Below are positions 2,469-56,000 of a stretch of DNA of 64,000 nt, in pieces. Each line of letters begins with the position of its first letter. Within the stretch, counting starts at the first letter, position 1. Made by a program: the position numbers and the translations under genes. The notes under the pieces are model-generated. The model did no database searches. It saw nothing but the letters and a program-made list of their open reading frames with translations, and had not been told where the DNA came from. Source of the DNA: Mytilus trossulus (lineage: Eukaryota); NCBI RefSeq assembly GCF_036588685.1, contig NW_026963347.1, positions 496,001-560,000 of the forward strand, read 5' to 3'.

Positions 2469-5244
2469 CATGCTCGGATGGAAAGTATGGTGAGGATTGT
2501 AATAGTGACTGTAATTGTTCAACATGTAGTACCTGTGATAATGCTACAGGCAACTGTTTATGTTATGAGCAATCGATTCCTCTGGAAAAATTAACAACAA
2601 AAGAATACACATCAGGTTGCAATTTTAGTTTATAATTTGGATTTCTGAAAATCTTATTGATTTGTAACTTGTCAAAGGCACATTTCATGTGGTATTATTT
2701 TAACAAATTACTTCAATTGGTGCATGCTGACATTATTTTGATGGAAAATATAAGTTTATATCGTTGATGTTTGGAATATTAAAAAGAAGATGTGGTATGA
2801 CCGCCAATGAGACAACTCTCCACAAAAGACAAAATGACACAGAAATTAAAATCTATAAATCACCGTACGGCCTTCAACAAGAGCAATTAAAGCCTTTCAT
2901 CATTGCAAAAGACGAACTGAAAGCGCTAAGTCAATTGATCAGTGGTATTACATGATAACAAATTAAATATCACTCTTGCAAAACTGCTGACTTTGGTACT
3001 TCCATTTATCTTTTAGAAGATGTGAAGGTGTAACGTTTATGCTAGAACAAACAGACATAAAGAGCTCGATCAGTTGATATGGAATAACTTGTAATAAAAG
3101 TTTAATTTGCATTTGTTCAAAACTTGAATTCAATTGATATTAAACAGTATGCCATAAAAGGCTAACCGTAATACATGTGTAATATATATCAATCATAGGT
3201 ATGAACGTAGTTTTCAATTTAGACTCGTTTATATTTTTTGTTTGGGCATGTATCATATTTTCCCTTCGGTTTATATGATCCGTTCGTCCTATATTGTCTC
3301 TTAAATTCAAGAGTCAATCTTAAATTGAGAGTAAATTATATGGCCTTCCAAATACCGTTTCGATCCCTAACATCACTGAAGAGACATATATTGTCGAAAT
3401 CTAGATCTGGTGTAAAAAAAATATTGACACCGAATGTTTGTGGCACAACATCGTGGCCACAAGTTAACATATTTTTTTTTCTGTGACGTATTAAATTTAT
3501 GTTAAGATCCATTTTGTTACATCTTGTGATCAATTTTATTTGGCAATCGCCAATGGCGATCAGCAGGGTTAAAGAACATCAGTTGTTCGACCTGTTAGTT
3601 AAATGCGTTTTGTTTAGATAAACTTTTTCACTTTTTTGGTCTTTTGAAAAATGTTGTTTGTGCTGTTTTTATACCCTTCTACAACGAAATTTGTTTGACA
3701 TGCACACGTATAAAAATTGCGGTTTTTATCCAACGCAATCATAGGTTTGAACGTAGTTTTCATTTTAGACTCATATATATATACAACTCGTCTAAACATC
3801 AACCCAACAATGTTAGATCTGTTAATTGGCGTTCGCAAATTTTTGGTTCTTCCCTCGCCGGGATTCGAACCCATGCTACTGTGATATCGTGACACCAAAT
3901 CGCCTGCACTGCAGCCGTCCCGCTAGACCACACGACCACCTGGGCTCTCAAAAAAAAGCTTTCGCTGGCCATGTGTTACCTTTCCACGCCAGTTTTAATC
4001 TAGCGGCGTACTACAGTACATGATATATAAGGCATGAAGATGTTATTGTTACAGATCAGCTAAATTATCTATAGTAAAGGATCCTACAAATTAATGTAAG
4101 ATACAGTCACAGAAAATAATTATATTCATAAGTACGTCTGAGTCAGTGACAACCCTACAACAGATGTATCCATCGGATCGCCATCAATGATTGTGATACA
4201 TGGCTGTGTACATAAAGTATAAACAACTCGTCTAAACATCAACCCAACAATGTTAGATCTGTGAATTTGCTTTCGCAAATTTTTGGTTCTTCCCTCGCCG
4301 GGATTCGAACCCATGCTACTGTGATATCGTGACACAAAATCGCCTGCACTGCAGCCGTCCCGCTAGACCACACGACCACCTGGGCTCTCAAAAAAAGAGC
4401 TTTCGCTGGCCATGTGTTACCTTTTCACGTCAGTTTTAATCTAGCGGCGTACTACAGTACATGATATATAAGGCATGAAGATGTTATTGTTACAGATCAG
4501 CTAAATTATCTATAGTAAAGGATCCTACAAATTAATGTAAGATACAGTCACAGAACATAATTATATTCATAAGTACGTCTGATTCAGTGACAACACTACA
4601 ACAGATGTATTCATCGGATCGCCATCAATGATGGTGATACATGGATGTGTACATAAATATATATATATACATTTTAAACTGTGGCAGTGGCTGTTTCAAG
4701 CTAATCTGCATTTGTGTACCTATAGTTATCAAATGATCAACACGTAGTTGGGGTATTTTTTCTTGACATGCGTACTGTCCAATAATTGTTTGTTATTTTT
4801 GCAAGAGCCTTTTAACGCGTGTATTAATCAATTTCAAATAGCTTATTTCGAAAATTAAATTTGTTAAAATAAATGAATTTCATTTCAGAGAAGAACCATT
4901 CATCACATTTTATTGCAGTATATGTCGGCATGGCTTCGGCGTTGATGGTTCTTGTTTGTATAGTTGCTGTTATTGTAAGAGTTCAGCAGAAAGTTTACAG
5001 ATTTTTTAGGTCAGGCAAAAGGAAATGTCCCAATGTGAAACATAAAGTACGAAAAATCATTCCGAAAAAGTCTAACGACCATACACACAATGAATCTGTC
5101 GAAGCTGTTCCCAATATTTTTGAAGCGCATGCGCAACCGTTTCTGTGTGAACTTGGTGATGGCTACTGCGAGGTATCCAATGTAATTAGCGCTCCAAATC
5201 ATACTAGACATACTGGTATTGATCATATTGACATTACAAGTTAA
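2469..5244 (+). CDS. 3' part of an EGF-like single-pass membrane receptor gene (gene A; exons 2469-2615 and 4889-5244; 5' exons not identified)
   Basis: An AG/GT-bounded phase-1 exon of 147 nt encodes CSDGKYGEDCNSDCNCSTCSTCDNATGNCLC (laminin-type EGF as in MEGF/SREC). The next phase-1 exon, after TTTCAG, encodes TM helix FIAVYVGMASALMVLVCIVAVIV, a basic stop-transfer segment and a tail with YCEV. Confidence 0.8.
3190..3772 (+). mobile_element. 546-nt hammerhead retrozyme-like element (one unit plus ~37-nt terminal redundancy) in a (TA)n tract
   Basis: CAATCATAGGTWTGAACGTAGTTTTCAWTTTAGACTC occurs at 3190 and 3736 (period 546). The unit contains a canonical HHR and has TA runs on both sides. 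Its 3' end recurs at 49711-49798. Confidence 0.8.
3370..3413 (+). ncRNA. Type I hammerhead ribozyme (canonical core, palindromic stem III)
   Basis: ACAUCA-CUGAAGA-GACA(uauau)UGUC-GAAA-UCUAG-AUC-UGGUGU. Stem I is 6 bp, stem II is 4 bp, and AUCUAGAU is a palindrome. Predicted cleavage is after C3407. Confidence 0.9.
3781..4656 (-). mobile_element. ~2 tandem copies of the ~440-nt tRNA-promoter-containing structured unit, bounded by (TA)n
   Basis: ACAACTCGTCTAAAC repeats at 3783 and 4223. The minus strand has A-box-like TGGTCGTGTGG and B-box GGTTCGAATCC. The same unit occurs at 48909-49700 and 53086-53750. Confidence 0.85.
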
Positions 5245-5430: not shown

Positions 5431-5507
5431 GTTTTAGAAAACGAATTCATTTATATTTAAAGTACTAGATAAATACATTTTAGTCGGGTTTGTGGAAAGG
5501 TGAGAGT

Positions 5508-5821
5508 AAGAAATGTATAATATTTATCATAATGCATCCCAAACATATTTCTAAGAAATTTATAATATCTATCATAATGCATCCCAAACATATTTCTAAG
5601 AAATGCATAATATTTATCATAATGCATCCCAAATATATTTCTAAGAAATGCATAATATTTATCATAATGCATCCCAAACATATTTCTAAGAAATGTATAA
5701 TATTTATCATAATGCATACTAAACATATTTCTAAGAAATGTATAATATTTATCATAATGCATCCAAAACATATTTCTAAGAAATGTATAATATTTATTAT
5801 AATGCATACTAAACATATTTC
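5508..5821. repeat. 45-bp minisatellite x~7
   Basis: The unit is AAGAAATGTATAATATTTATCATAATGCATCCCAAACATATTTCT. It explains the 15-aa periodic ORFs in the track. Confidence 0.95.
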
Positions 5822-6312
5822 CAGGAAAAAATTGAATACACTAGGGTATCCAAATAACACCTTTATTTCCGTGTGTTATTATCTTCGTTTATTTGGAAAC
5901 AAGACAAAACAATCATTCTGTTTTAGTTTTGTAGATGTACAATGTATCCTCATATATATATAGTTCCACAAAAATATTTTTTAATCATAGTAAATTGGTG
6001 TGGAACTTATCTTTAAATGGTCCTTTTTTAATGATGAGTACTTAGAAACCATATCAGCCATGCTAAACTTCACATCCGTCCAAGTCAATCAAGAGATGTA
6101 ATGTTTTTATTCCTCAAAATTGTAAAATCAAAACACGACAATTGGCTGCACTTCAGGATGTATGAATTTAACACTGGTTTAAAATTCTCTACAGCCCTGG
6201 TTACACCAAGATAACTAATATCACTTTGTCACCTAAAAAAAGGGATTCTTGCAAATCATAAGTAATCGGTACGCTACTATCTCTGTCTGAACTGTCTAAT
6301 TCGTGTATGTTT

Positions 6313-10991: not shown

Positions 10992-13011
10992 ATGGAGAAC
11001 TATCAAGTTGGTATGTTAATGTCTGTATTTGTTCTGCTTGGTGCAGTATATGAACACACTGTAAATAAAAACATAGACCAAATAAAAGACGAGTTACTTC
11101 AAAACGGAAATGAAATAATGAAAGGAAAAGAAGGATTAAAATCGACCTACAAGGCATTTGTACAAGTGAAAGTAGAAAACGAATTGGTCAGAAAGGAACT
11201 TACACAAGTGAAAGTTGAATTGGATACGACGAAAAAGGAAGTTAAACAAGTGAAAGTAGGACTAGAGTCGACGACAAATGAAGTTAAACAAGTGAAAGTA
11301 GAGTTGGAGTCGACGAAAAGGGAACTTAAACAAGTTCAAGTAGAATTGGAAAATATTAAAACAGGTAAATAAACCATGTCAAGACCATATTTTAGCTATA
11401 CCATGATACTAGTATTGGCAAATTTTAGTTTTAGCTCACATGGCCTGAAAGGGTCAATTGAACTTTTCGCATCACTTGACATCCGTCGTACGTCGTCGTC
11501 CGTTGTCTCCCGTGGTCCGTTGTCGTCGGTTAACTTTTAGAAAAATCTTCTCTTCTGAAAACTTCTTGGCCAAATTGAACCGAACTTGGGCTAAATCATC
11601 CTTATGGTATCTTGTTTCAAACATGTATCCGATAACCCCTTCCATCAATCAAGATGGTCAATATGGCTTAAGATAGAGCATGGGATAAAATGCAGTATTT
11701 GGCATATAGCTCTGAAACTAAAAGCATTTAAATCAAAACTGACGTGATAAAAATGTTCATCAGGTTTAGACACATTTTCCCTGAAATTTTAAACAGACTA
11801 AAATATCAGTGATGCAAGATCAACGAAGCAGAGATTTTTGGCATGGTCTATTCTCGTCTACAATGTTGTAAAGTGTGCTTTGTTTAATAGTCCCGTAGAC
11901 TAATGTGAGCGACAACAGACTTTTAAGAGGCTCTAGTTTATAAAGCGCAAACGTGTTCTATAAATTGAAGCGCAAATAGTCTTACAAAGCGCAAATGTCC
12001 TATTGAAAAGCGTTCCGCGCCGACTTGTAAAAAACAAAAAATAAAAAATGTAAAGGAATTTGATGCGACTTTCACAAAAGTGAGAGATTAAGCTACCTTA
12101 AAAACAAGGTTTAATGCACATTTTTGTTAATAAAAATTCCGTATAAGATTAACAAATAATACATGATGATCTTGTTGTGTTAATTATTGGTACTGACGTT
12201 GTTTGTCATCTCGATAACGTGTTACAGTGTTCTTTTATTTGTCTTTTTGAACATGTCTTTTACTTTTTAGTCTGTTTTTGATGATATCCATATATCATGA
12301 CTATGTACTTATGATCCCGACATTGTGTTAATATTTTATGATAAATGTTTGATTTTTTACTATCATTCTTGCTTATGTTTTTGGTCCATATACCTTTTAG
12401 TAATTAATTGATACATTTTACGCTGCTCTATACTTATACATCCAGTCATTATGTTATTGTTCTATGTTATTTTTTGAATACTTGTCTTTCATTTTTGCCT
12501 TCATTAATACCTAATGGTAGCATTCATTAAACATGATTAAATGACTAACTTATAAACTAATTCTGTAAACAAGATTATTAGATCATCCTTAACAGCGATT
12601 CAACCTTGATATTTTTCAGAACTTCACACACAAAGACCAGGGTTTTATGTAACTCTATCGGCCCATACTCTCCTACATCAGACTCAAAAAATAGAGTTCG
12701 ACCTGGTGAAAACTGATGTTACAAATAATTATAATAGAATTACCGGAATATTTACAGTTCCAAAGGACGGACTATATCATTTTTCGTTTACAATGTTGTC
12801 TTCAAAGGACAGACTACATGCTGAGATTGTGCATAATCAACAAGTGATTGGACGAAATGTTGGAACTGCCATCTTCGTGTCAGCAACAATTAACGCTGTA
12901 ATTTCCTGTAAACAGGGAGATTTAGTTTTTGTACGGCACCTTGCAGGGGAAGGGACCGAGACAATCACTGGGGCAGGATATTCAGCATTTTCGGGCTTTT
13001 TAATTGACTGA
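10992..13011 (+). CDS. Secreted coiled-coil C1q-domain-containing (C1qDC) protein, ~254 aa; exons 10992-11364 and 12620-13011
   Basis: Hydrophobic N-terminus, then a coiled coil of 14-aa repeats. A phase-1 GT-AG intron (ACAG|gtaaat ... tttttcag|AA) joins it in frame to a gC1q domain (IEFDLVKTD, YNRITGIFTVPKDGLYHFSF, YSAFSGFLI). An additional upstream exon cannot be excluded. Confidence 0.9.
11431..11938 (+). mobile_element. Non-autonomous Helentron-type element (HINE) in the C1qDC intron
   Basis: Starts with TTTTAGCTCAC (subTIR) followed by a short palindrome and a (CGT)-rich microsatellite. Ends with GTGAGC, a hairpin and CTAGTTT. Confidence 0.65.
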
Positions 13012-32200: not shown

Positions 32201-35200
32201 GTTTCTAACAGATAAAAAAAAATGGCTTTGTTGTTTTTAGTTTTAATAAAGATTATGTTAAGCGTTGGTTGTTAAATGTACATGAAATTGTTATCAAAGG
32301 TACCAAAATTGTAATTTGGTATGCCAGACGCGCGTTTCGTCTACATAAGACTCATCAGTGACGCTCATATCAATATATTTGTAAAGCCAAACGAGTATAA
32401 ATTTGAAGAATATTGAGAATACAAAATTCCAAAAAGTTGTGCCAAATACGGCTATGGTAGTCTATGTCTGGGATAAGAACATCCTTAGTTTTTCGAACAA
32501 ATCTAAGTTTTATAAACAGAAAATTTATATAAATGACAACATTATTGATATAAATGTCAACACAGATTGTTGACTACTGGGCTGGTGATACCCTCGGGGA
32601 CGAAACGTCCATCAGCAGTGGAAGGAGCTTCAATATCCTTAAAATTCGAGATTTAGTAGGAATGGGTAACCCTGAAACTCCGCACAAAAAGAACTTTAAA
32701 AAACTCGAATGTCGCCTGCTTGTCATAGCCCAGACAAGATAGTTGGTTGCGCAAAAGGCTCTCCAGTTTGAATTAGGTCCTCCTCCAATGTATCTTACAA
32801 ACTTTGATGGTACACATGTAACGAAAATTAAAATCTGTCCTGGATGGTCTTTTATAAAATGGTCATCTCTTAGAAAGCATGTGAATATTTGAAGACATGG
32901 CAGTTATTCAACCCATTACTAGGATACAAAGCACTTTTTTTATTTGGCAATTGTTATTTTAAAAATAATCCTTTAAGTTTCGAAAAGAGGTCCCGCATTG
33001 ATTTTGTCACTGATTAGTATCCCACAATATCCATAACAAAATTAAAACAGCAGGTCCTTGGGAGGGACAAATCTTTACGATAAGTTCTAGACCATCACAA
33101 TCGTGTTCTTGGGAATGGAAGAAATGTTTGTTAGTTGGGGAAAACAAAGTTGCTCTTGTTGAATTCTTTGGTTCGGAAAAGAGTAAATAATCCTATAGAT
33201 TTACACTTGAATGTATTGATTTATGTGTATCACACGGAAGTATGTGCCACAAAATAAATGTTGGAAATGAAATAGCGTAGAATGGTTTTATCTTATAATC
33301 AAACAGGAAGAAGCCGATTACAAAATGTTTCTTAATGCAAAAATATGCAGCTGACAAAAGTAACGACACCATTGTTATAAAACCTTCTGACATTGATGTG
33401 GAAGAATTGGCCTACTATTTTCACAGTTGCATATCAATTCTAACATTGTTAGATTGGTGAGAATGTTTGTAGAAAACTGCCAGGATTTCACGGCAGTACA
33501 GGTTGTGATTCAGTAAGTGTTTTGTGTGGTAAAGGAAAAAAAGCAAAGTATTCGGCTTTTTGACACGTTATGTGTTTTCGGAAGGTCTATTCCATCGTGG
33601 TGAAACCTTTGAAGAGGTTGACGAAGAGTTGACAAAACTCTCGAGAGGTTTTCGTGTTCTATATATGCATACGAAATTTAAAATATCGATGAAAAAAGAT
33701 CAGGACGTTTTGAAATGCAACCAAAAACAGATTTATTGACATCTACTGTCCCCAACAAAAGATGCAATGTTAAAGCACATAAAACCATCCAACTTTCAGA
33801 CGAAGATTTGGAAATCTGCTCTTAAACACAACACTGGTCTGTTGCTAAACAACTATAATTGGATTGTTCAGAACGATTTGATCAGTATCAATTGGCTAGA
33901 CCAACCACCAGCGTTAGATGCTTTAATAATTATGAAGTGCTGTTCATTTAAAGCTGGTTGTGCCAACAACAGATGTTCATGTGTTCAACAAGGTTTCTCC
34001 TGAACAAATACCTGTATGTAAATACTCGAAAGCTTGTAGATATAAGGATTATCAAAACGTTGATATTGCTAATAGCGATGACCACGAATATGATGGAAAT
34101 GATGATAATGAAAATTCGGTAGATGCAGGTGACCAAACTGATGATGATTCTATGGATTGAACTTCTGCATGACCTTTAAATGTAGTGATTCGGTTGTTAA
34201 AAAAAAATTAAAAAGATAGAGATCTAGAAACCCTGACAGTTTTGTGTGTTTTAATATGTTAGTTATTTCATGAATATGATGTATGAATTTGTGACAGAAT
34301 CGTGCATTTCTAGTTGCCTATGTTTGTGTCTGTCGTTGATTCTATATTTTTGTTTCTTACCTTTAAATGTTTTTTTCAACAGCCTTTACATTGTAGTTAC
34401 ATTATGCTCTATGTTTTAATATGAAAAATATACCGTATTATCAAGAAAATTAGTACTTTTGCTTCTTTTCATTGAAAATCATGAATTTTGGAAATTACCC
34501 TCCCCCTTTTTTCTTGGTCCTCTACGATTGAAAAATTAATTGAAAATTGGCCTGCGTTTTAATAAGATATAATTTGTTCCATTTAATAAAAAGAATAGTA
34601 CTGAATTATTGGTTATTTTTACATTTTTCTGTAAATATGTGCAAAACAAAATTTTTGATATACCCTTAAATAAGTCCCCTTTTAACCCCTTTTGGACACT
34701 TTTTCAAAAGTCTAACACCTCTTAAAATATTCTTCATATATTACTCTTTAAATTTATACCAAAAAATTGCTGTACCCTGGGGTGTACTCAGAATTGAAAT
34801 TTTGCCCTACCAGCTGATGGACTATGAACACGAATTATATTTTCCTAAGGAGGATATACACAACCAGAAAAACGAACATTGTTTGGGGTAATAACTCTTA
34901 AAAAAAGGTCCTCGGCTAAAAAGGATGAGTTTCAAAGCGTAATATAAATGTTTGATATAATATTCAAAACATATTAAAGACATCTTGCGATACCCCTATA
35001 AACTGCATGAAAAATAGGTGGAAAATTAAAAAAAAATTTAGTTTAAACAGAATCTATGGATTTTTCCTACATATAAGAGGTAAGACCTAATAAACGGGTT
35101 GGAAATTCGGGAATAATGCCATGTATTTTGGATAAGCAAGGAGAGTATGCATAGATAAGGGAAGAAAACATGCCTCGCAAATGGATAAATCTGGACTCTA

Positions 35201-47000: not shown

Positions 47001-50000
47001 TTTTTTTATATTTTAAAAATTGATATATATTAGTACGTAAGTGTTAATTAACATCGTGTTGAAGTTATATTATGATTGTTTATTGTGAAATTTTAATTTC
47101 TATACTGTATTGAATACATTTTAAATTTCAAGTTGTTGTTCAAATTTTATTATAAAAAAACAAAATTGATAAAATTCAGTTGATAGATTCAAAGAATAGG
47201 TCTAGGTTGGTTAAGACTTGGTCGAGTATGGTTCAGACTAGGTCGATTACGGTTCAGACTTGGTCGAGTACGGTTTAGACTAGGTCGAGTACGGTTCAGA
47301 CTAGTATAAAATGGTTAAGTACTGGTCAAGTACACATTCAGACTGTTAAGTATGGTTCAGACTACAGTCGAGTAAAAATCAGTTCAGTCGAGTACAGATA
47401 TAGGCCATTTCAGACTAATAATGGTTTGTAGTGTTATATTGTCAAAAATAGCCCATATTTATGTAACAATGAATAGCTAAAAGTTCACATTATCAAAATT
47501 TTGTAAAACTGATTCTGGGACCAAAAATGGGTCCTACTGAACCTACTCCTATCATATATTACAGGGAAACGTGTGGGTTTTTTTCATCAAATGATGCCAA
47601 AAGTTAAAAAAATGTGTCCTATGACCCCGCCTGTCAACTAACATGGACAATATAGCTAAACATAAAACACGGGTAAAATGCAGTTTTGGCTGATATCTCC
47701 GAAACTAAAGCATTTAGAGGAAATTTAACAATGGGTAAAAATGTTTATCAGAATAAGATTTATCTGGTAAATGAAATGTTTAGCCGTTGTTGGTTTGCTA
47801 ACCCTGAATGAGTAATTCCAAAAAAAAATGCAGTTTCTGATTAGTTTTGTAATTTTAAAAGTAACTGTAATTCAAAGTTACATAATTAACAATTATTTTG
47901 TTCAACTATAATTGATAGGGCTTGGTAAAATTTCACATTAAATGTACCTTGAAGATATTTAATTATATTTTTTTTAGAATTGTCTACCTAAGGAATATAT
48001 TTCCTTTTGCTGGATTTTCACAATACTTTCGGAAATTTGGTTCTACCTTTTTTATGTTGCCTAATGTTTCTATTATTCTTTATTGTTTGACGTCTGGTGT
48101 GCACAAAGTTAATTAGGTATAGCTAACAAAATTAAGAAATGGAAATGGGGAATGATTCAAAGCAAAAACAAGCCGACAAAAGAGCTTAAAACAGCTCAAA
48201 GCCATCAATTGTGAAATGCCGCACCCGGAGGAAGGCTTTCGCTGTCCCCTAAACAAAAAATATGTACAACTAGTTCAGGGAAACTTGCCGACAAACTTAA
48301 CTCCAAAACATAAAAAAAGAACTAAAATTTCAATTATTACAAGACTAGCAAAGGCAGGATGCTCCTAACTTGGTAAAGGCACAACAATGTGGTAGGGATT
48401 TACATGTTTTGTGAGGTCTCAATACTCCCAAATACCTTTAGTCAACTTAAAACAAACAAACACACAGCAATATGAATAGTAAAACTCAGTTTAAAACAAT
48501 TTCGAATTCGATGTCAGAATAGGTACATGTAAAAAAAAAAATAAGTCAAATTAAAATGATACATAAAATAACAAAGAATTCCTAGCAGTTACTGATATGC
48601 TTCCTCGTGACCTCAATTAAAGGGATTGAACGATTATGTCTTCGTCATATGAAAATCAAGCACAATCCCTCCCTATGGGGGTTGAGTATAATACCATCGT
48701 AAATATATAAGAAGACCATAATCCGTATCATGTCAAGAACTGGTCCAGGAATAAATGTAAAAATTGAAATGGGGAATGTGTCAAAGAGACAACAACACGA
48801 CCAAACAAGCACAAAACATCCAACGCGTTACGACTACCGATGTGTCTTCAACACAGCGCAGTATGCTCCCACTGTTTATTTCGTATACAAAGACCCTACA
48901 TATATATAGAATATAATTATTTTCTGTGACTGTATCTTACATTAATTTGTAGGATCCTTTACTATATATAATTTAGCTGATCTGTAACCATAACATCTTC
49001 ATACCTTATATATCATGTACTGTAGTACGCCGCTAGATTAAAACTGACGTGGAAAGGTAACACATGCCCACCGAAGGCTCTTTTATTTGAGATCCCAGGT
49101 GATCGTGTGGTATAGCGGGACGACTGCAGTGCAGGCGATTTGGTGTCACGATATCACAGAAGCATGGGTTCGAATCCCGGCGAGGGAAGAACCAAAAATT
49201 TGCGAAAGCAAATTTACAGATCTAACATTGTTGGGTTGATGTTTAGACGAGTTGTATATACATTATGTACACAGCCATGTATCACCATCATTGATGGCGA
49301 TCCGATGGATACATCTGTTGTAGGGTTGTCACTGACTCAGACGTACTTATGAATATAATTATTTTCTGTGACTGTATCTTACATTAATTTGTAAGATCCT
49401 TTACTATAGATAATTTAGCTGATCTGTAACAATAACATCTTCATGCCTTATATATCATGTACTGTAGTACGCCGCTAGATTAAAACTGACGTGGAAAGGT
49501 AACACATGCCCATCGAAAGCTCTTTTATTTGAGAGCCCAGGTGGTCGTGTGGTCTAGCGGAACGGCTGCAGTGCAGGCGATTTGGTGTCACGATATCACA
49601 GAAGCATGGGTTCGAATCCCGGCGAGGGAAGAACCAAAAATTTGCGAAAGCAAATTTACAGATCTAACATTGTTGGGTTGATGTTTAGACGAGTTGTATA
49701 TATATATATAGAAATTTGTTTGACATGCACACGTATAAAAATTGCGGTTTTTATCCAACGCAGTCATAGGTTTGAACGTAGTTTTCAATTTAGACTCGTA
49801 TATATATATAATTTATATATATAAAAGTCTATAAAAAGGACCAACCAGCAAATTTACTATGTACCGGATCGTCTAGAATAGGCGATACTATGCAGATAAG
49901 GAAAAAATTATATCAGTCTAAAGATTTGCACAACGGTACTGATATAAGGTGTTATTAAACAAAAATGTTGTTATAAAATCGTGTTGACAAATATTTCGGC

Positions 50001-53000
50001 TCAACAAATGGCCTTCTTCTTGTGTCACAAGTTTTAACAATACTGATACATAATGTACAAGGTGTGAAAATAGATCAGTAATAATACAGGTAAGTTTTGG
50101 TCGATTGATTTTAATCCTGAATATCATAATTTAAACAAAACACTATAAATCAATATACGTGACTGTGTATATTAACAATAAAAATAAGTGAAAAACAAGA
50201 CTGTTAGTATTTCTTATTGATGCCGTTTGGGTGATGTACATTAAGTTCCTTTATCCAAAAGCTTTCCCGAACCTGTCGCTGTGTATCACTCCAGTGAATG
50301 TTCTGCTCAATCACTAGAATTTTCATGCGGTTAAAGTCATCAAGTTTGTGATCCGACTGTCTGAAGTGCTGAGAGACTGGAAGAAGTGGCTTCTTCGAGA
50401 TATCACTCCTATGGCCATTGAGGCGTTTGTGGAAAGGCTGCTTTGACTCGCCAACATATTGGAGGCCACAAACCGAACATTCTAGTATGTAAATAACATT
50501 CATACTTTTGCAGGTAACATTGCAAAATATCTTATAGTTATTTTCGGTTGCCTTACTGTGAAATGTTGACGAATGCTGCATCTGTAAACAGCATTTGCAG
50601 CGTTTTTTTTCCACACGAACGACATTCTCCAGGAGTACTTCTATTATCAGACACTTCAGCCCGCACTAGCAGGTTCCGCAGACTACTAGGTTGCCTAAAA
50701 GCTATCATTGGAGGCTCAGGGAAAATCTTGGACAGTTTGGAATTCTTTTCAACTGATTTCCAATGCTCACGAATGACACCAAAGCTGTTTTTGAGAGATG
50801 GGTGATAAGTAAGAACACATGGAGTCCTTTTATTTTTCTTTTTAACTTTGTATTCCAATAGTTTACTCCTCGGAATTGACTCCGTTTTCTGAAAGCTTTT
50901 TTTTGATATTTCTGTGTTTGTAGCCCCTTTTCTTCAAGCGAGTTTCAAGTTTACGCAGTTGTCTTTTAGTTGTTTCTGTGTTGGAGCATATTCGCTTGCT
51001 TCTAAGTGCCTGACTGTATGGAATGCTCTTGGTAAGATGAGCAGGATGGCAACTTTAAGGGGACAAATATTGATGAGTGTCAGTAGGCTTAGAATATAAA
51101 TCTGTAGATATGATGCCCTCTGTGAGCGAACTTGAAGTATCGAGGAAGGCGATTTTGGATTTAGACTTCTCATGAGTAAATTTGATACTAGGATGTATGT
51201 TGTTGGCATGAGTGATAAAAGTGTCTAAATCCTCGTCGCTTTTGTTCCATTTCATATCCACATCATCTATAAATCTAAACCAGGAAAGCGGTTTTTCGAT
51301 GGAAGTTTCAAGGAGTTGTTTCTCTAATTTGCCCATAAATATGTTGGCATATGACGGAGCCATTTTGGTGCCCATGGCAGTTCCATTTACTTGCAAATAA
51401 TGATCTCCATCAAAAGTAAAGTTGTTTTTCTTAAGTACTAGCGTGAGCATTTTGACCAGGCATTCAGTAGGTGGATATTTTACTGGTCTGGAATTCCAAA
51501 CTTCTTTGCATGCATCGATGCCATCTGCATGTGGAATATTAGTGTAGAGGGAGGTAACATCCATGGAAACAAGAGTCGTGTCGGAGGGGAGTGGGTTTAA
51601 GGCCTGCATTTTTCTAAGATAATCGGTTGTATCTTTGATGTGAGATGGTAAGTCTTCAACATGTTGACGAAGATGGAAGTCAACAAATTCCGATATTTTT
51701 TCCGTCGGATGACCGTTCGCTGAAACTATAGGTCTTCCGGGGTTATTGGCCTTATGAATTTTAGGTAATAGATAGAATCTGTCCGGTTTTGGGTTTTCTG
51801 GTTTCAAATATTCAAGAGTTTTGTCATCGATGAAACCATCGTCATGCATTTCTTCCAAACTATTAGTAATATCTCTGCTAAAAGATGTAGTAGGATCAGA
51901 GTCTAGTTTTTGGTAGAACCTTGCATCGCTAAGTTGTCGTTCAGCCTCTTGAATATAGGCAGTTTTATCCATGACAACCACTGCACTGCCCTTGTCTGCA
52001 GGTTTAATGACGATATTGTTGTTAGATCGTAAGTTTTTCAGTGCAGTCCGTTCTTCATTGGTAAGATTGTCAAAAGGTTTATTGTTATTTTTAGTATTTT
52101 TAATAATGTATGACTTAAAGTTATCAATAAAAGATTCCAAGGTAGCATTTTTGCTCGGTCTAGGGATCCAAGAACACTTTTTAATAAATTTGTAGTTGTT
52201 CTCTACTTCTGAAATTTCTGAGTCCCCATCCGCGCTTATTATGTTATCCTCCTTCGACGCGAAATATTCCTTAATACGTAGACCTCTAGCAAAATTGTCA
52301 AGGTCTTCCGACAATTTGGTGTCATTGACAGGAGCAGGTAGAGGACAGAAGTTAAGTCCTCTAGAGAGAAGAGATGTTTCCGATTCCGTTAATTGGTGTT
52401 GAGAAAGATTGACCACGATGTTGGAGGGTGAATCAGTCTGTTGAGGTCTACGTTTAAAGCGTCTTATTCGTTTAGTCTTTCTCTCTGATGGTAATGAAGG
52501 GTGGGTGTATTCTATGCCATCCCTGCGGAATTTTCGTTTTTGTCTTTCACTTAAGTTGTTGGATTGTATAGTAGTTATGTCCTTGAGACGAGTGTTGATA
52601 GCATCACAATTGTCAGATGTTAGATCTCTTTTGCAGCTATTCAAAAGGGTGTTAAACTCGCCAGTGAGAGTTTTGAGATGTCCTTCGCAGTGTTGTTTAA
52701 GGAGGACCACTAACCGCTTTGAACAATGGAAGAGGGTTTGGTCCCATCTGCGAAGTAGTGTTTTGGATAAAGAGCCAGGTGCTTGTGGCTTGATCTTGAT
52801 TTGTAGTCCGTTAGGAATACGTTCATTAAACTCGTAGTTAATCAAATTAGATAAATGGTGTTCAGTTCTAATTTGTTTTTGTTTAATAGCTCTAAGTTGT
52901 TTAAAATAATCATTGATGTTCATGATATAAGAGCTAAAAACTTAAATTTGCTGGGATTATGTGAGTAACATGATACAGGTCATTCAGGGGGAAAATAATA

Positions 53001-56000
53001 TAAAAGTCTATAAAAAGGACCAACCAGCAAATTTACTATGTACCGGATCGTCTAGAATAGGCGATACTATATATATATATATCTATACGCCGCTAGATTA
53101 AAAATTGACGTGGAAAGGTAACATATGGCCACCGAAAGCTCTTTTTTTTAGAGCCCAGGTGGTCGTGTGGTCTAGCGGGACGGCTGCAGTGCAGGCGATT
53201 TGGTGTCACGATATCACAGTAGCATGGGTTCGAATCCCGGCGAGGGAAGAACCAAAAATTTGCGAAAGCAAATTTACAGATCTAACATTGTTGGGTTGAT
53301 GTTTAGAAGAGTTGTATATATATATATATATATATATACATATACAACTCGTCTAAACATCAACCCAACAATGTTAGATCTGTAAATTTGATATATATAT
53401 ATATAAGTACGTCTGAGTCAGTGACAACCCTACAACAGATGTATCCATCGGATCGCCATCAATGATGGTGATACATGGCTGTGTACATAATGTATATACA
53501 ACTCGTCTAAACATCAACCCAACAATGTTAGATCTGTAAATTTGTTTCGCAAATTTTTGGTTCTTCCCTCGCCGGGATTCGAACCCATGCTACTGTGATA
53601 TCGTGACACCAAATCGCCTGCACTGCAGCCGTCCCTCTAGACCACACGACCACCTGGGCTCTCAAAAAAAGAGCTTTCGGTGGGCATGTGTTACCTTTCC
53701 ACGTTAGTTTTAATCTAGCGGCGTACTACAGTACATGATATATAAGGCATATATATATATATATATATGTATGTTTCAATATTAATACCAAATTATTCCA
53801 TCTCTGATGACCTTACAACAGTATCCTAACTATATCCCTTCTCAGTAAGTCTGTTTAAAGGTTTGTCTGCTTTATATAATATAATACCCTAATAAAAGAT
53901 TGGATGTTAAATACCTGAAAGTATAAATTTCTGCATGATGCCTTCATTGCCAAAATATTTAAAAATGTTTTGACTAGTTTGTGAAATCGAAAACCCTGGT
54001 ATATTAACAATGTTGCAGTAACACAGATATTTCTTTTGTTAAAATCAAATACATTTCTTATAAACAGGTTGCATTATAACGCTGTAACATTATTTTTTTT
54101 CAAACTGAGCAAATTTCAGTTTGTATGTTTTGAGCAAACTATATTAGATTAACTCATCTTTCCACATTTTGCTTTCAACATGTTTTGGTCGGGGGGAAAT
54201 TTCTAAAATTATACAATCATCCAAATTTTGGCTATTATTCTTTAATGCAATATTAAAAATAATAAAAAAGCAATAAAAAACATAGAGAGAGATAGAGTGC
54301 ACACGAAACACATATAGTCGGATGATTTTATTATTTTCTGAAGCATGTCCAGCAGGAACTTACGGGAAGTTTTGTAAGAATCACTGCCTAAAAGGTCAGT
54401 TTGGTAAAATGTGCAACTCTACATGCCATTGCAGTTCAGTTCAGGTATGCAACAATATATTTGGATGTGTCTGTCCAGAAGGATTAACAGGAAACAAATG
54501 TGATAAAGGTAATGTTGGAAATAATTCATTCAACTTTAAGACATGCTCTTTTTTACTTCAATCATGTGTTAATAATATAAAACAACAAAATTTTATGTTA
54601 ACACTGCAATTGTCAAATTCAGATTGAAATTAACCTTTTATACTCGCCATTAACAAATATATTAACTATAAAGATTGATAGACTAACTGTTGATTTGATT
54701 AACGTTCAGTGTCAAATGTTTCAAGCATTTTAAGATTAGACAAAAGAAAAGACGTCAATATTATAAGTAGGCATTTCCGATAATGTATTTTCTATTGTTT
54801 TTATGCCACAATTTTTGACCGGCACTTGAAGCTTTAGTTAATTGAATCCACACTATTGTCACTGGTTTTCACAGTTTATAACGTTTTAACTAAACGGATC
54901 CACAAACAAGACGCAACGCTCACTGGTGATACCATGGATATTTTTCATCAATACATCTACTTTCAAAATTGGTATCTGTATTGTTGGAAATTGGTTGATG
55001 TGTCATTGACATACAGGCCCTTTTACACTATTTGAAATAGATGATGTGAATGATAACTGATGAATATATATATATATGCCTTTTACATGACTATTTTTAC
55101 GTTGGCCTATGGAACGTTTTTTTATCTTCACCAGAGTGCATATTCTATGTTTGTCATGTGAAATCTAAACAGAAAAATTGCAATGTTTACTAATTGTTAT
55201 TGTAGATGTTACATCTGTAGAAAACACTTTCACAAATATTGTTGTTACTGGTTATGCAAGTGAAGCTATCACTATCGAGGAGACACCAATCAAAAGCAGT
55301 GGTAGGTAGATGCAGCATCTAATAATAATAAATAATAATGACAACTTAAATTGACTTCCAATTGACGAATTTGACTTATCACAAAGAGGCGAATAAACGC
55401 ATCATCAACATGTTTTATAAAACCAATTTCTCCCGCTACCTTTACCATGTTTACATATCAACAAAATACATTGTATATTTGAAATGTGGATACAGCTCGA
55501 TAATGATACATATTATTTTTTAAATAACATGGTAAAAGCAGATGTTATATTTGTAACAAAATTTCACGCGAAAATAAATTTATCAGTTTGATTTACCTTT
55601 TTACAAAATTTTCATTTTCACTTATTTTACCATGAAATATGAATTTCGTTATTGTAGAACCATCGAATAAAGAATGGCTATGGTATACAATTTGTATTAC
55701 TGGAGCTATAATAATAACTGCGTCAAGTCATGTATTGCGTTCTTATAGAAAGCGAAAATTAAGACTTACAAATGAAGAAGCAGTGGTGGAATCAACAACA
55801 ACTTCTCAGTATACTGGTTTCTATCATGAAATTGACGAAAACATTTTTAAAGATGTCACACCAAGCCTATCCCTGGTATCACACCCATCTAAAATGGAAG
55901 CTATGTGCTTTATTCCACAAGAGAATTCGTTGATCACAAGAAGCACTGAACTTGTAAATACAGATTATCTTGATCCTGTATTCGCAGCAGAAGACGACGA

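What the first reader, a model, noticed from the sequence alone, without database searches (positions are those of the whole stretch)
48909..49700. 442-nt tRNA-promoter unit that behaves like a retrozyme but lacks a canonical ribozyme
Seen: the unit has a tRNA-Leu/Ser-like head (GCCCAGGTGGTCGTGTGGTCTAG...GCATGGGTTCGAATCCC, 49535-49620) in the middle of the inserts, with a T run just upstream of the head. It occurs as head-to-tail partial tandems longer than one unit. Four of five inserts end at GAGTTGTATA(TA)n, with no poly-A or LINE tail. An ordinary SINE starts at its tRNA head and is monomeric. Inference: a Pol III-transcribed RNA copied from a circular or multimeric template by PLE machinery. 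I do not recognise this class, though it may already exist in repeat libraries as a satellite or SINE.
Basis: partly seen in the sequence, partly recalled or inferred. Interest (0 to 1): 0.85.

Follow-up and report, generated by a model that had tools for sequence, protein, structure and literature searches.

The report
Ribozyme-less tRNA-headed tandem retroelement, Penelope-mobilised
The 442-base repeat is a real, young, heavily transcribed non-coding jumping element that lands in TA repeats as multi-unit arrays with the insertion footprint of Penelope-like retrotransposons. It behaves like an animal "retrozyme" but has a tRNA-like promoter module instead of a self-cutting ribozyme.

Summary
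Window 48909-49700 holds 1.79 head-to-tail units of a 442-nt repeat. The window has five inserts: four end at ..GAGTTGTATA+(TA)n and one ends at ..ACGTACTTAT+(TA)n.

Exact genome-wide counts:
- 4,243 internal unit junctions
- 2,755 array ends at unit position 442
- 584 array ends at position 92
- 3 array ends at the unit's best plain TA site

The two used ends follow the only two AGAC motifs on the sense strand. 5' ends are scattered. Whole 2-4-unit arrays carry 5-19-bp target-site duplications. Units within an array are near identical. Symmetric head-to-head pairs share rare variants.

There is no hammerhead on either strand, although my scan found four hammerheads elsewhere in the window. 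Stranded RNA reads show 30-50-fold sense bias. Unit junctions are 13-30 times over-represented relative to array ends.

A (TA)n-specific Penelope-like element (RT plus C-terminal GIY-YIG, 73-bp pseudo-LTR, tail ..TAGACTTTTATA(TA)n) lies 119 bp away. A 546-nt hammerhead retrozyme with the same kind of tail lies beside two arrays.

Best reading (0.7): a Penelope-mobilised non-autonomous element. Pol III transcription and a circular RNA remain unproven.

It is a new variant of a known kind. The scan already found this family on other DNA of this genome (s1-820576, s1-823567).

The parts
48909..49258 (+). 5'-truncated first unit (unit positions 93-442), preceded by (AT)n at 48900-48908
   Evidence: blastn of the unit against the window, 96.9% identity; sequence read
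49259..49700 (+). Full 442-nt unit; the array ends at ..GACGAGTTGTATA and is followed by (TA)n at 49701-49710
49535..49631 (+). Degenerate tRNA-derived module: A-box-like 49550-49560, perfect B box 49609-49619 with an intact T arm. The same module in the first unit starts at 49093.
   Evidence: Sequence read. ARAGORN negative at default, 90% and 80% thresholds; a weak call at 70%. No Rfam tRNA hit.
49523..49530 (+). T run just upstream of the head (T7 in the family consensus). It is a candidate Pol III terminator and forms the loop of a predicted hairpin. It is also the most indel-variable site in the RNA reads.
   Evidence: reads with 1-2 bases left out at 49526-49527
49687..49700 (+). Main 3' end signal AGACGAGTTGTATA (AGAC at unit 429); 2,755 exact array ends in the genome
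49339..49350 (+). Second 3' end signal AGACGTACTTAT (AGAC at unit 81); 584 exact array ends in the genome, used by the insert at 53396-53750
3780..4656 (-). Second array of the family: an exact dimer (unit 5-442 plus 1-442) in (TA)n, with its 3' end facing the 546-nt retrozyme
53070..53318 (+). Third insert (unit about 191-442), ending at position 442 in the (TA)n at 53315-53344
53341..53750 (-). Two further inserts on the minus strand: 53396-53750 (unit 185-442 plus 1-99, ending at the AGAC-81 site) and 53341-53390 (unit 393-442). They lie tail-to-tail with the third insert.
49819..53070 (-). Candidate mobiliser: a Penelope-like element, decayed in this copy (at least 2 frameshifts). RT ORF at 51055-52923. 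GIY-YIG ORF at 50204-50614, with a Cys-rich linker upstream. 73-bp pseudo-LTR at 52998-53070, identical to 49819-49891. The tail is ..TATAGACTTTTATA(TA)n.
   Evidence: Pfam RVT_1 4.9e-10 and GIY-YIG 4.7e-08; 100% direct repeat; three-frame translation. In the genome: at least 3,049 candidate places, intact 911-aa frames, 122 exact tails in (TA)n, and 4 tail-to-head junctions, 3 of them beside 911-aa copies.
49711..49805 (+). 5'-truncated 95-bp end of the 546-nt hammerhead retrozyme (tail ..TTTAGACTCG+(TA)n), inserted in the (TA)n behind the array
   Evidence: loose ends of the reads at 49711 continue into that element
3190..3780 (+). Full 546-nt hammerhead retrozyme unit (3235-3780) with a 45-bp partial tandem copy upstream. 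The hammerhead core CTGAAGA..GAAA is at 3376-3420.

Best explanation
The 442-nt unit is a young, abundant, non-coding, non-autonomous retroelement: at least 3,300 insertions and roughly 7,000 units, with a median of 4 differences between units of different arrays.

Its sense strand carries a degenerate tRNA-derived module with Pol III-type A and B boxes, and a T7 run a few bases upstream of that module. This strand is strongly transcribed.

A Penelope-like element (PLE) reverse transcriptase and GIY-YIG endonuclease, supplied in trans, copies the RNA into (TA)n tracts by target-primed reverse transcription. A (TA)n-specific 3.25-kb PLE family with intact 911-aa frames is the likely source; one decayed copy lies 119 bp from this array.

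cDNA synthesis starts at one of two sites of the form AGAC-N5-6-TAT(A). It runs for more than one unit length, either on a circular or concatenated RNA or by repeated jumps from the 5' end to the 3' end of the template. It stops at a variable point, which gives the 5'-truncated first unit. Sometimes the cDNA folds back at a short palindrome, which gives head-to-head inverted arrays.

The element does what hammerhead retrozymes of the same genome do, but it has no ribozyme.

Shown: the insertion anatomy, the target-site duplications, the 3' end rule, sense transcription, the excess of junction-containing RNA, the absence of a hammerhead, and the presence and (TA)n specificity of the PLE.

Inferred: that the PLE is the mobiliser, that Pol III makes the RNA, and what form the template takes.
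For: 1. Polarity. In 47 arrays the 3' end lies at unit 442 in 30 and at 80-107 in 9. 5' ends range from 5 to 413.

2. The 3' end rule, genome-wide. There are 2,755 ends at position 442 and 584 at position 92, against 3 at the unit's longest plain TA stretch. AGAC occurs on the sense strand only at 81 and 429, just upstream of those two ends.

3. One-event insertion of multimers. Arrays of 2.1, 3.2 and 4.3 units are flanked by target-site duplications of 14-19, 5-9 and 9-12 bp. Units within an array differ by a median of 0 positions, against 4 between arrays.

4. Inverted pairs. Three of five head-to-head junctions are symmetric about a palindrome, and two of these share a rare variant in both arms.

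5. These features (5' truncation, partial tandems, an adjacent inverted 5'-truncated copy, microsatellite targets) are the published PLE hallmarks (PMC8557442).

6. The PLE. RT plus C-terminal GIY-YIG and a pseudo-LTR are present in the window. The family has 122 exact tails in (TA)n and intact 911-aa frames. Its tail has AGAC three bases before the TA run. So does the tail of the 546-nt hammerhead retrozyme. 50 of 199 (TA)n borders in 195 kb have AGAC within 18 nt, against a 4.5% background.

7. RNA. Depth for reads whose first mate lies on the minus strand is 850-2,500, against 10-80 for the other direction. Junction depth is 850-1,370, against 24-64 at the array end, a ratio of 0.02-0.05 (the DNA ratio is 0.65). 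The unstranded, DNA-like run X24 gives 0.55.

8. No hammerhead with up to 1 core mismatch on either strand, while the same scan finds four elsewhere in the window. No Rfam ribozyme at E<=10.
Against: - Apart from AGAC plus the TA run, the unit's tail shows no significant similarity to the PLE's (z 0.3-1.3). The partnership therefore rests on a 4-nt motif, a shared target and a shared footprint.
- The array sample (window plus 20 loci) was chosen from the best-scoring hits and is enriched for the family, so the AGAC enrichment at (TA)n borders is partly circular.
- No discrete RNA 5' end at the head or 3' end at the T run reached the tool's threshold. Reads cross the T7 run at about half the flanking depth, which fits Pol III poorly.
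- Arrays of 11-17 units exist and could have grown by unequal exchange.
- The window's own PLE copy is broken. Other PLE clades of this genome, such as a family 54% identical in the endonuclease, could be the real source.
- Dfam and Repbase could not be searched.
Confidence: 0.7

Rival explanations
1. Satellite-type DNA spread. The unit is a satellite monomer whose extrachromosomal circular DNA is amplified by rolling-circle replication. The product re-integrates at fragile (TA)n tracts by microhomology-mediated repair, and arrays then grow by unequal crossing-over.
For: Arrays of 11-17 near-identical units exist. TA microhomology is present at many junctions. The 2026 preprint on animal retrozymes discusses satellite birth from such repeats.
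Against: - The ends are strongly polar: the 3' end is fixed at two AGAC sites (3,339 cases) against 3 at the best TA microhomology site, while 5' ends are scattered.
- Whole arrays carry target-site duplications of 5-19 bp.
- There are at least 3,300 dispersed loci with a mean of about 2 units.
- The RNA is strand-specific and abundant.
Confidence: 0.08
2. Ordinary LINE-dependent tRNA-SINE. A LINE with a (TA)n-type tail mobilises it, and tandem copies arise secondarily.
For: A/B boxes and a tRNA-like T arm. Target-site duplications. Tandem and palindromic SINE structures are reported in bivalves (PMC11481361).
Against: - Insertions do not start at the head: 2-4 of 47 start near it.
- The head lies 276 nt into the unit as defined by the insertion ends.
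- Multi-unit arrays lie inside a single target-site duplication.
- There is no poly-A or LINE-like tail.
- Head-to-head fold-backs and (TA)n specificity match PLEs, and hammerhead retrozymes of the same genome share the footprint.
Confidence: 0.07
3. PLE-mobilised, but with the tRNA-like module a dead relic. Pol II or read-through makes long multimeric transcripts of large arrays, and no circular or Pol III RNA is involved.
For: Reads run through the T7 run at about half depth, and no start pile-up at the head was reported. Long arrays exist and could dominate expression.
Against: - A 30-50-fold sense bias, although arrays lie in both orientations, argues for a promoter inside the unit.
- The B box is perfect and the T arm intact in a consensus of 71 units.
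- RNA that runs from the last unit into the flank is 13-30 times rarer than the DNA ratio predicts.
Confidence: 0.15
4. Cargo of a Helitron or Helentron. The tandem repeats sit inside a rolling-circle DNA transposon, as described for other bivalve satellites.
For: (TA)n flanks would be compatible with A|T target sites.
Against: - Array flanks are unrelated from locus to locus, apart from other (TA)n-seeking retroelements.
- There are no shared terminal sequences outside the unit.
- 5' ends are variable.
- Target-site duplications are present; Helitrons make none.
Confidence: 0.02

Closest known systems
Metazoan non-LTR retrozymes (Cervera and de la Pena 2020, PMC7229834; Li et al. 2026 preprint 10.64898/2026.07.22.740005)
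   Same: Non-coding units of a few hundred nt in dispersed short tandem arrays. Strongly and constitutively transcribed. Thought to depend on PLEs. In this genome a 546-nt hammerhead retrozyme shares the (TA)n target, the fixed AGAC-type 3' end, 5' truncation and tandem form. The predicted RNA is unusually structured (z -4.6 as a circle).
   Different: There is no type I hammerhead or any other known self-cleaving motif, which is the defining feature of a retrozyme. It carries a tRNA-derived A/B-box module instead. A circular RNA has not been shown here.
Sm-alpha / Sj-alpha SINE-like elements of schistosomes (PMC2770079 and references there)
   Same: tRNA-like sequence (tRNAscan calls thousands of Sm-alpha copies tRNA-Gln) in a short, high-copy, non-coding retroposon that also occurs in tandem.
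   Different: Sm-alpha carries an active hammerhead; this unit does not. There is no sequence relation. They come from different phyla.
Penelope-like elements: Naiad clade and the Neptune/Nematis type with a Cys-rich EN linker (Craig et al. 2021, PMC8557442)
   Same: The insertion footprint: 5' truncation, partial tandems (pseudo-LTR), an adjacent inverted 5'-truncated copy and a microsatellite target. (TA)n is the published target of Naiads, which also lack canonical hammerheads. The window's PLE likewise shows no hammerhead.
   Different: The unit encodes nothing and is 442 nt. The PLE found here has a C-terminal endonuclease, so it is not a Naiad. Its clade was not determined.
tRNA-derived SINEs of bivalves (PMC11481361, PMC4758252)
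   Same: A/B boxes, short length, non-coding, high copy number, target-site duplications.
   Different: The head is internal to the insertion unit. There is no LINE-derived tail or A-rich end. It is inserted as multimers and targets (TA)n.
Cassandra / Helenus / Ajax (TRIMs with Pol III-type small-RNA modules, PMC10886601)
   Same: A small-RNA-gene-derived Pol III module borne by a non-autonomous element that uses a non-LINE machinery. Tandem arrays are reported.
   Different: Those are LTR elements with a primer-binding site and polypurine tract, mobilised by LTR retrotransposons. This unit has none of these features.

Membership tests
Non-LTR (metazoan) retrozyme | A type I hammerhead ribozyme in every unit | tested here: not met
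   No Rfam ribozyme at E<=10. My own scan (CUGANGA with up to 1 mismatch, helix II of at least 3 bp, GAAA) finds nothing on either strand of a dimer, yet finds the cores at 3376(+), 42290(+), 32358(-) and 26677(-). The only look-alike (consensus positions 227-261, CTGACGT..GAAA) has two core deviations and no helix I.
Non-LTR (metazoan) retrozyme | Short tandem repeats dispersed in the genome | tested here: met
   4,243 junctions and 3,339 array ends; mean about 2 units
Non-LTR (metazoan) retrozyme | Abundant unit-length circular RNA | tested here: inconclusive
   Sense RNA is abundant and junction-rich, but short reads cannot separate circles from multimers.
PLE-dependent non-autonomous element | PLE insertion footprint: 5' truncation, partial tandem, inverted 5'-truncated copy, microsatellite target | tested here: met
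   searches compared with PMC8557442
PLE-dependent non-autonomous element | 3' end shared with an autonomous PLE of the same genome | tested here: inconclusive
   Only AGAC plus the TA run is shared. The 70-nt tails are not significantly alike.
PLE-dependent non-autonomous element | An active PLE with the same target present in the genome | tested here: met
   RT plus GIY-YIG; 911-aa open frames at 98-99% identity; 122 exact tails in (TA)n
tRNA-derived SINE (LINE-dependent) | Pol III A and B boxes in a tRNA-like head | tested here: met
   The B box is perfect. The A box matches 7 of the 9 specified bases. The spacing is 48 nt. The head is not a foldable tRNA by ARAGORN.
tRNA-derived SINE (LINE-dependent) | Insertions begin at the head and are monomeric | tested here: not met
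   5' ends range from 5 to 413; only 2-4 of 47 lie near position 277. Multi-unit arrays lie inside one target-site duplication.
tRNA-derived SINE (LINE-dependent) | LINE-derived or A-rich 3' tail | tested here: not met
   The ends are ..GTATA(TA)n or ..CTTAT(AT)n. A matching LINE was not searched for genome-wide.
Satellite DNA | Long homogeneous arrays at few loci that grow by unequal exchange, without target-site duplications | tested here: not met
   At least 3,300 loci, median 1.25 units in the sample, target-site duplications around whole arrays. A minority of arrays reach 11-17 units.
Helitron/Helentron cargo | Conserved transposon termini around the arrays and no target-site duplication | tested here: not met
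   Flanks are unrelated; target-site duplications are present.
Functional tRNA gene | Cloverleaf with an anticodon, detected by ARAGORN or Rfam RF00005 | tested here: not met

The most novel reading that the evidence does not exclude
A ribozyme-free circular-RNA retroelement. Pol III starts at the tRNA-like head and stops at the T7 run of the next unit, which gives an almost exactly unit-length RNA. A predicted long stem holds its two ends side by side. A host enzyme of tRNA processing or ligation closes the RNA, or the PLE reverse transcriptase simply steps across the nick. Rolling reverse transcription from the AGAC..UAUA site then writes multi-unit arrays into (TA)n. This would show that the PLE/retrozyme life cycle does not need a hammerhead, and that a tRNA-type module can take over both transcription and unit-length processing.
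Probability: 0.3. Interest if true: 0.85.

Novelty: new variant of a known kind. Interest (0 to 1): 0.62.

Why it matters
Animal retrozymes are defined by their hammerhead, and the ribozyme is assumed to make the unit-length, circularisable RNA that a Penelope-like element then copies. Here an element in the same genome has the same target, the same type of 3' end and the same tandem and inverted footprint. It has several thousand young copies and very high sense-strand RNA levels, and it manages without any ribozyme. That separates the Penelope copying step from ribozyme processing.

It also gives concrete handles on the poorly understood Penelope integration cycle:
- a 3' start rule (AGAC a few bases before UAUA), supported by 3,339 ends against 3;
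- target-site duplications around whole multimers, which show that tandems are made in one event;
- palindrome-centred fold-backs, which explain the inverted copies.

It would also be, as far as the held literature shows, the first SINE-type (tRNA-module) passenger of a Penelope-like element without a hammerhead.

Tried and rejected
- Ribozyme in the unit: rejected. Rfam finds nothing and my own hammerhead scan finds nothing while its positive controls are found. The only candidate I found (CTGACGT..GAAA upstream of the T run) has a changed A9, a changed 16.1 and no helix I. It also covers the three most variable positions of the family (247, 251, 255).
- Functional tRNA, or a tRNA-Leu/Ser identity: rejected.
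- Extended homology of the unit to the PLE or to its tail: none. Homology to the 546-nt retrozyme is a single 44-nt stretch, 77% identical, E 0.008. That is too weak to build on.
- Gapless inverted-repeat search inside the unit: nothing. The predicted long-range stem between positions 203-256 and the head rests on RNA folding with G-U pairs and bulges. At DNA level the complementarity is only z 2.9.
- Discrete Pol III ends in the reads: not seen at the tool's threshold. The dip at the T run may be partly a mapping effect of the homopolymer.
No loci could be cut for other PLE copies either. PLE tails other than the window's were therefore studied only through exact pattern counts.
- Literature search for printed stretches of the unit: no paper.
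- Dfam and Repbase are not available here.
Full report
**What is there**

Window 48909-49700 holds 1.79 head-to-tail copies of a 442-nt unit: 93-442, then 1-442. The window has five inserts of the family:
- 3780-4656(-), an exact dimer
- 48909-49700(+)
- 53070-53318(+)
- 53396-53750(-)
- 53341-53390(-)

Four end at ..GACGAGTTGTATA followed by (TA)n. One ends at ..GACGTACTTAT followed by (AT)n.

The sense strand carries:
- a perfect B box (49609-49619) inside an intact T arm;
- an A-box-like TGGTCTAGCGG (49550-49560);
- a T run ending 5 nt before the module (T7 in the consensus of 71 units).

It is not a tRNA gene. ARAGORN finds nothing until its threshold is cut to 70%, and Rfam's tRNA model is silent.

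**Size and age of the family**

The genome is G000, 1.30 Gb. Exact pattern counts give 4,243 internal 442>1 junctions, 2,755 array ends at position 442 next to (TA)n, and 584 ends at position 92. The reversed control patterns give 0. Units of different arrays differ at a median of 4 of 441 positions, so the family is young. Runs labelled as four organisms, and a fish-gut metatranscriptome, also hold it.

**Anatomy of insertions**

I tabulated 47 arrays from the window and 20 fetched loci.
- 3' ends: position 442 in 30 arrays, positions 80-107 in 9.
- 5' ends: spread from 5 to 413, with clusters at 89-101 and 382-403.
- Length: median 1.25 units, mean 2.1, maximum 16.7.

AGAC occurs on the sense strand only at 81 and 429. 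Each occurrence lies 11-13 nt before one of the two used 3' ends. The unit's longest plain TA stretch (about position 191-197, no AGAC) serves as a 3' end only 3 times in the genome, against 3,339 for the two AGAC sites. The 3' end is therefore chosen by a signal, not by TA microhomology alone, and the process is polar.

Where the target is not pure (TA)n, whole arrays of 2.1, 3.2 and 4.3 units are bracketed by target-site duplications of 14-19, 5-9 and 9-12 bp (L033, L045, L047). Units within an array are near identical: a median of 0 differences over 180 pairs. Multi-unit arrays are therefore laid down in one event from one template sequence.

Head-to-head inverted pairs are common. Three of the five I could read are symmetric about a short palindrome (GGATCC, CTGAGTCAG, GCAAATTTGC). 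Two of these share a rare variant in both arms, so they are single-event fold-backs. An asymmetric pair with a TA spacer has arms of very different age, so it is two separate insertions.

**No ribozyme**

Rfam finds no ribozyme in the unit at E<=10. My own hammerhead scan (core with up to 1 mismatch, helix II, GAAA) finds nothing on either strand of a dimer. The same scan recovers four hammerheads elsewhere in the window, one of which Rfam missed. The only look-alike has two core changes, no helix I, and covers the most variable positions of the family.

**The neighbours**

119 bp downstream lies a Penelope-like element on the minus strand (49819-53070). It has:
- an RT ORF (Pfam RVT_1, 4.9e-10);
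- a C-terminal GIY-YIG ORF (4.7e-08) preceded by a Cys-rich linker;
- a 73-bp perfect pseudo-LTR;
- a tail ..TATAGACTTTTATA(TA)n.

This copy has frameshifts. The family, however, has at least 3,049 candidate places, open 911-aa frames at 98-99% identity, many inverted pairs, 122 exact tails in (TA)n, and tail-to-head junctions beside three of the 911-aa copies. It shows no hammerhead.

The 95 bp directly behind the array (49711-49805) are the 5'-truncated end of a 546-nt tandem element (full copy at 3190-3780). That element carries a type I hammerhead with a 6-nt palindromic helix III, ends in ..TTTAGACTCG(TA)n, and flanks unit arrays in 8 of 21 sources.

So three unrelated sequences (PLE, hammerhead retrozyme, tRNA-headed unit) share the (TA)n target, the tandem and 5'-truncated form, and AGAC just before the TA run. 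50 of 199 (TA)n borders in the 195 kb at hand have AGAC within 18 nt, against a 4.5% background. That sample is enriched for these families. Beyond this motif the tails are not significantly alike.

Craig et al. 2021 (PMC8557442) list exactly this footprint for PLEs: 5' truncation, partial tandems, an adjacent inverted 5'-truncated copy and microsatellite targets. They report (TA)n for Naiads, canonical-hammerhead-free Naiads, and a Cys-rich EN linker proposed to mediate microsatellite bias.

**RNA**

I laid four raw RNA runs of organism A on 48850-49760.

In the three stranded runs, depth for reads whose first mate lies on the minus strand is 850-2,500, against 10-80 for the other direction. 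By the usual library convention this means RNA of the tRNA-head strand, at 30-50 to 1. About 500-700 reads per million were laid.

Coverage is continuous around the whole unit, including the 442/1 junction at 49258/49259.

Sense depth at the array end (49700) is 24-64, against 850-1,370 at the junction. That is a ratio of 0.02-0.05, while the DNA ratio of ends to junctions is 0.65. The unstranded, low-level run X24 gives 0.55, and the antisense reads of the stranded runs give about 1-2. The laying method therefore does not lose end reads.

The abundant sense RNA is thus specifically junction-containing. This fits circles, long multimers or transcripts confined to arrays. It does not fit uniform read-through.

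Depth falls to about half at the T run, but no pile-up of starts at the head or of ends at the T run reached the tool's threshold. Pol III initiation and termination are therefore neither shown nor excluded.

Folded as a circle, the sense strand has an MFE of -137 kcal/mol, against -107 +/- 7 for shuffles (z -4.6). A predicted long stem places the region upstream of the T run against the 5' half of the head. At DNA level that complementarity is only z 2.9.

**Mechanism**

The most likely course (0.7):
1. Sense RNA is made from a promoter inside the unit. The A/B boxes make Pol III the obvious candidate. This step is inferred.
2. A (TA)n-specific PLE endonuclease nicks a TA tract.
3. The exposed TA end pairs with the UAUA that follows an AGAC motif, and the PLE RT starts there.
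4. The RT copies more than one unit length, either on a circular or concatenated template or by stepping from the template's 5' end back to a 3' end.
5. It stops at a variable point.
6. Occasionally the cDNA snaps back at a palindrome and copies itself.

The anatomy, the target-site duplications, the end rule, the RNA strand and junction excess, and the PLE's presence and target are shown. The identity of the mobiliser, the polymerase and the form of the template are inferred.

**Rivals**
- PLE-mobilised but made by Pol II or read-through, with the tRNA module a relic: 0.15.
- DNA-level satellite or eccDNA spread: 0.08. Contradicted by the polarity, the end rule and the target-site duplications.
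- LINE-dependent SINE: 0.07. Contradicted by the internal head, multimers inside one target-site duplication, and the lack of a LINE tail.
- Helitron or Helentron cargo: 0.02.

**Comparison and novelty**

The unit works like a metazoan non-LTR retrozyme (PMC7229834; preprint 10.64898/2026.07.22.740005) but fails that family's defining test, the hammerhead. The nearest precedent for a tRNA-like module in such an element is Sm-alpha/Sj-alpha of schistosomes, which do carry a hammerhead (PMC2770079). It is not an ordinary bivalve tRNA-SINE (PMC11481361).

I found no paper describing a tRNA-headed, ribozyme-less PLE passenger. Dfam and Repbase could not be checked. I rate it a new variant of a known kind.

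The scan has already met this family on other DNA of the same genome and reached the same reading (s1-820576, s1-823567). This report adds:
- the genome-wide 3' end rule;
- the target-site duplications around whole multimers;
- the fold-back evidence;
- the RNA ratio of array ends to junctions, with its internal control;
- the direct neighbourhood of the PLE and the hammerhead retrozyme in this window.

**Limits**
- The array sample is the best-scoring 20 loci plus the window. Further genomic DNA could not be fetched.
- Only one read-laying run was available.
- The organism's name is coded. Earlier notes call the genome mussel-like, which I did not verify.

Noticed in passing
window 3190-3780 (+): 546-nt tandem hammerhead retrozyme: unit 3235-3780 plus a 45-bp partial copy upstream. 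Its core is CTGAAGA-helix II-GAAA-TCTAGA-TC at 3376-3420, and helix I is CATCA/TGGTG. Rfam missed it even at E<=10. It ends in ..TTTAGACTC(G/A)(TA)n and forms tandems in L040.
   Followed up: partly
window 32321-32364 (-), 42290 (+), 26677 (-): Three more type I hammerhead cores with a palindromic helix III. Only 32321-32364 reaches Rfam's gathering score (35 bits). No tandem array was detected around them. They may be ends of other retrozymes or PLEs.
   Followed up: no
window 53268-53391: The tail-to-tail pair of unit inserts across (TA)n forms a long perfect hairpin. It draws many spurious miRNA-precursor hits below gathering scores (best mir-5014, 77 bits against a cutoff of 101).
   Followed up: partly
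G000:C7:16256125-16266735: Eight exact PLE tails spaced about 1,455 bp apart on one strand: a tandem array of a 5'-truncated or internally deleted PLE derivative of about 1.46 kb. It could be another non-autonomous passenger. Seen only as pattern hits.
   Followed up: no
window 49346-49351 (unit position about 88-93): Sense RNA depth steps up abruptly from about 1,200 to about 1,850 and stays high to unit position about 247. The position coincides with the AGAC-81 end site and a 5'-end hotspot. Unexplained; it could be a sub-family lacking positions 1-92 or a second transcript start.
   Followed up: no
window 5507-5828, 11192-11350, 47209-47364: Unrelated minisatellites: 45 bp x 7.2 copies at 93% matches, 42 bp x 3.8, and 21/42/63 bp.
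   Followed up: no
G000 (e.g. C13:16145429-16156414; C5:12551316-12555889): A second PLE family, 52-55% identical in the endonuclease, with open frames of 908-934 aa, tandem copies about 3.53 kb apart and inverted pairs. One pair lies within 1 kb of a unit array on C5. It is an alternative source of the machinery.
   Followed up: no
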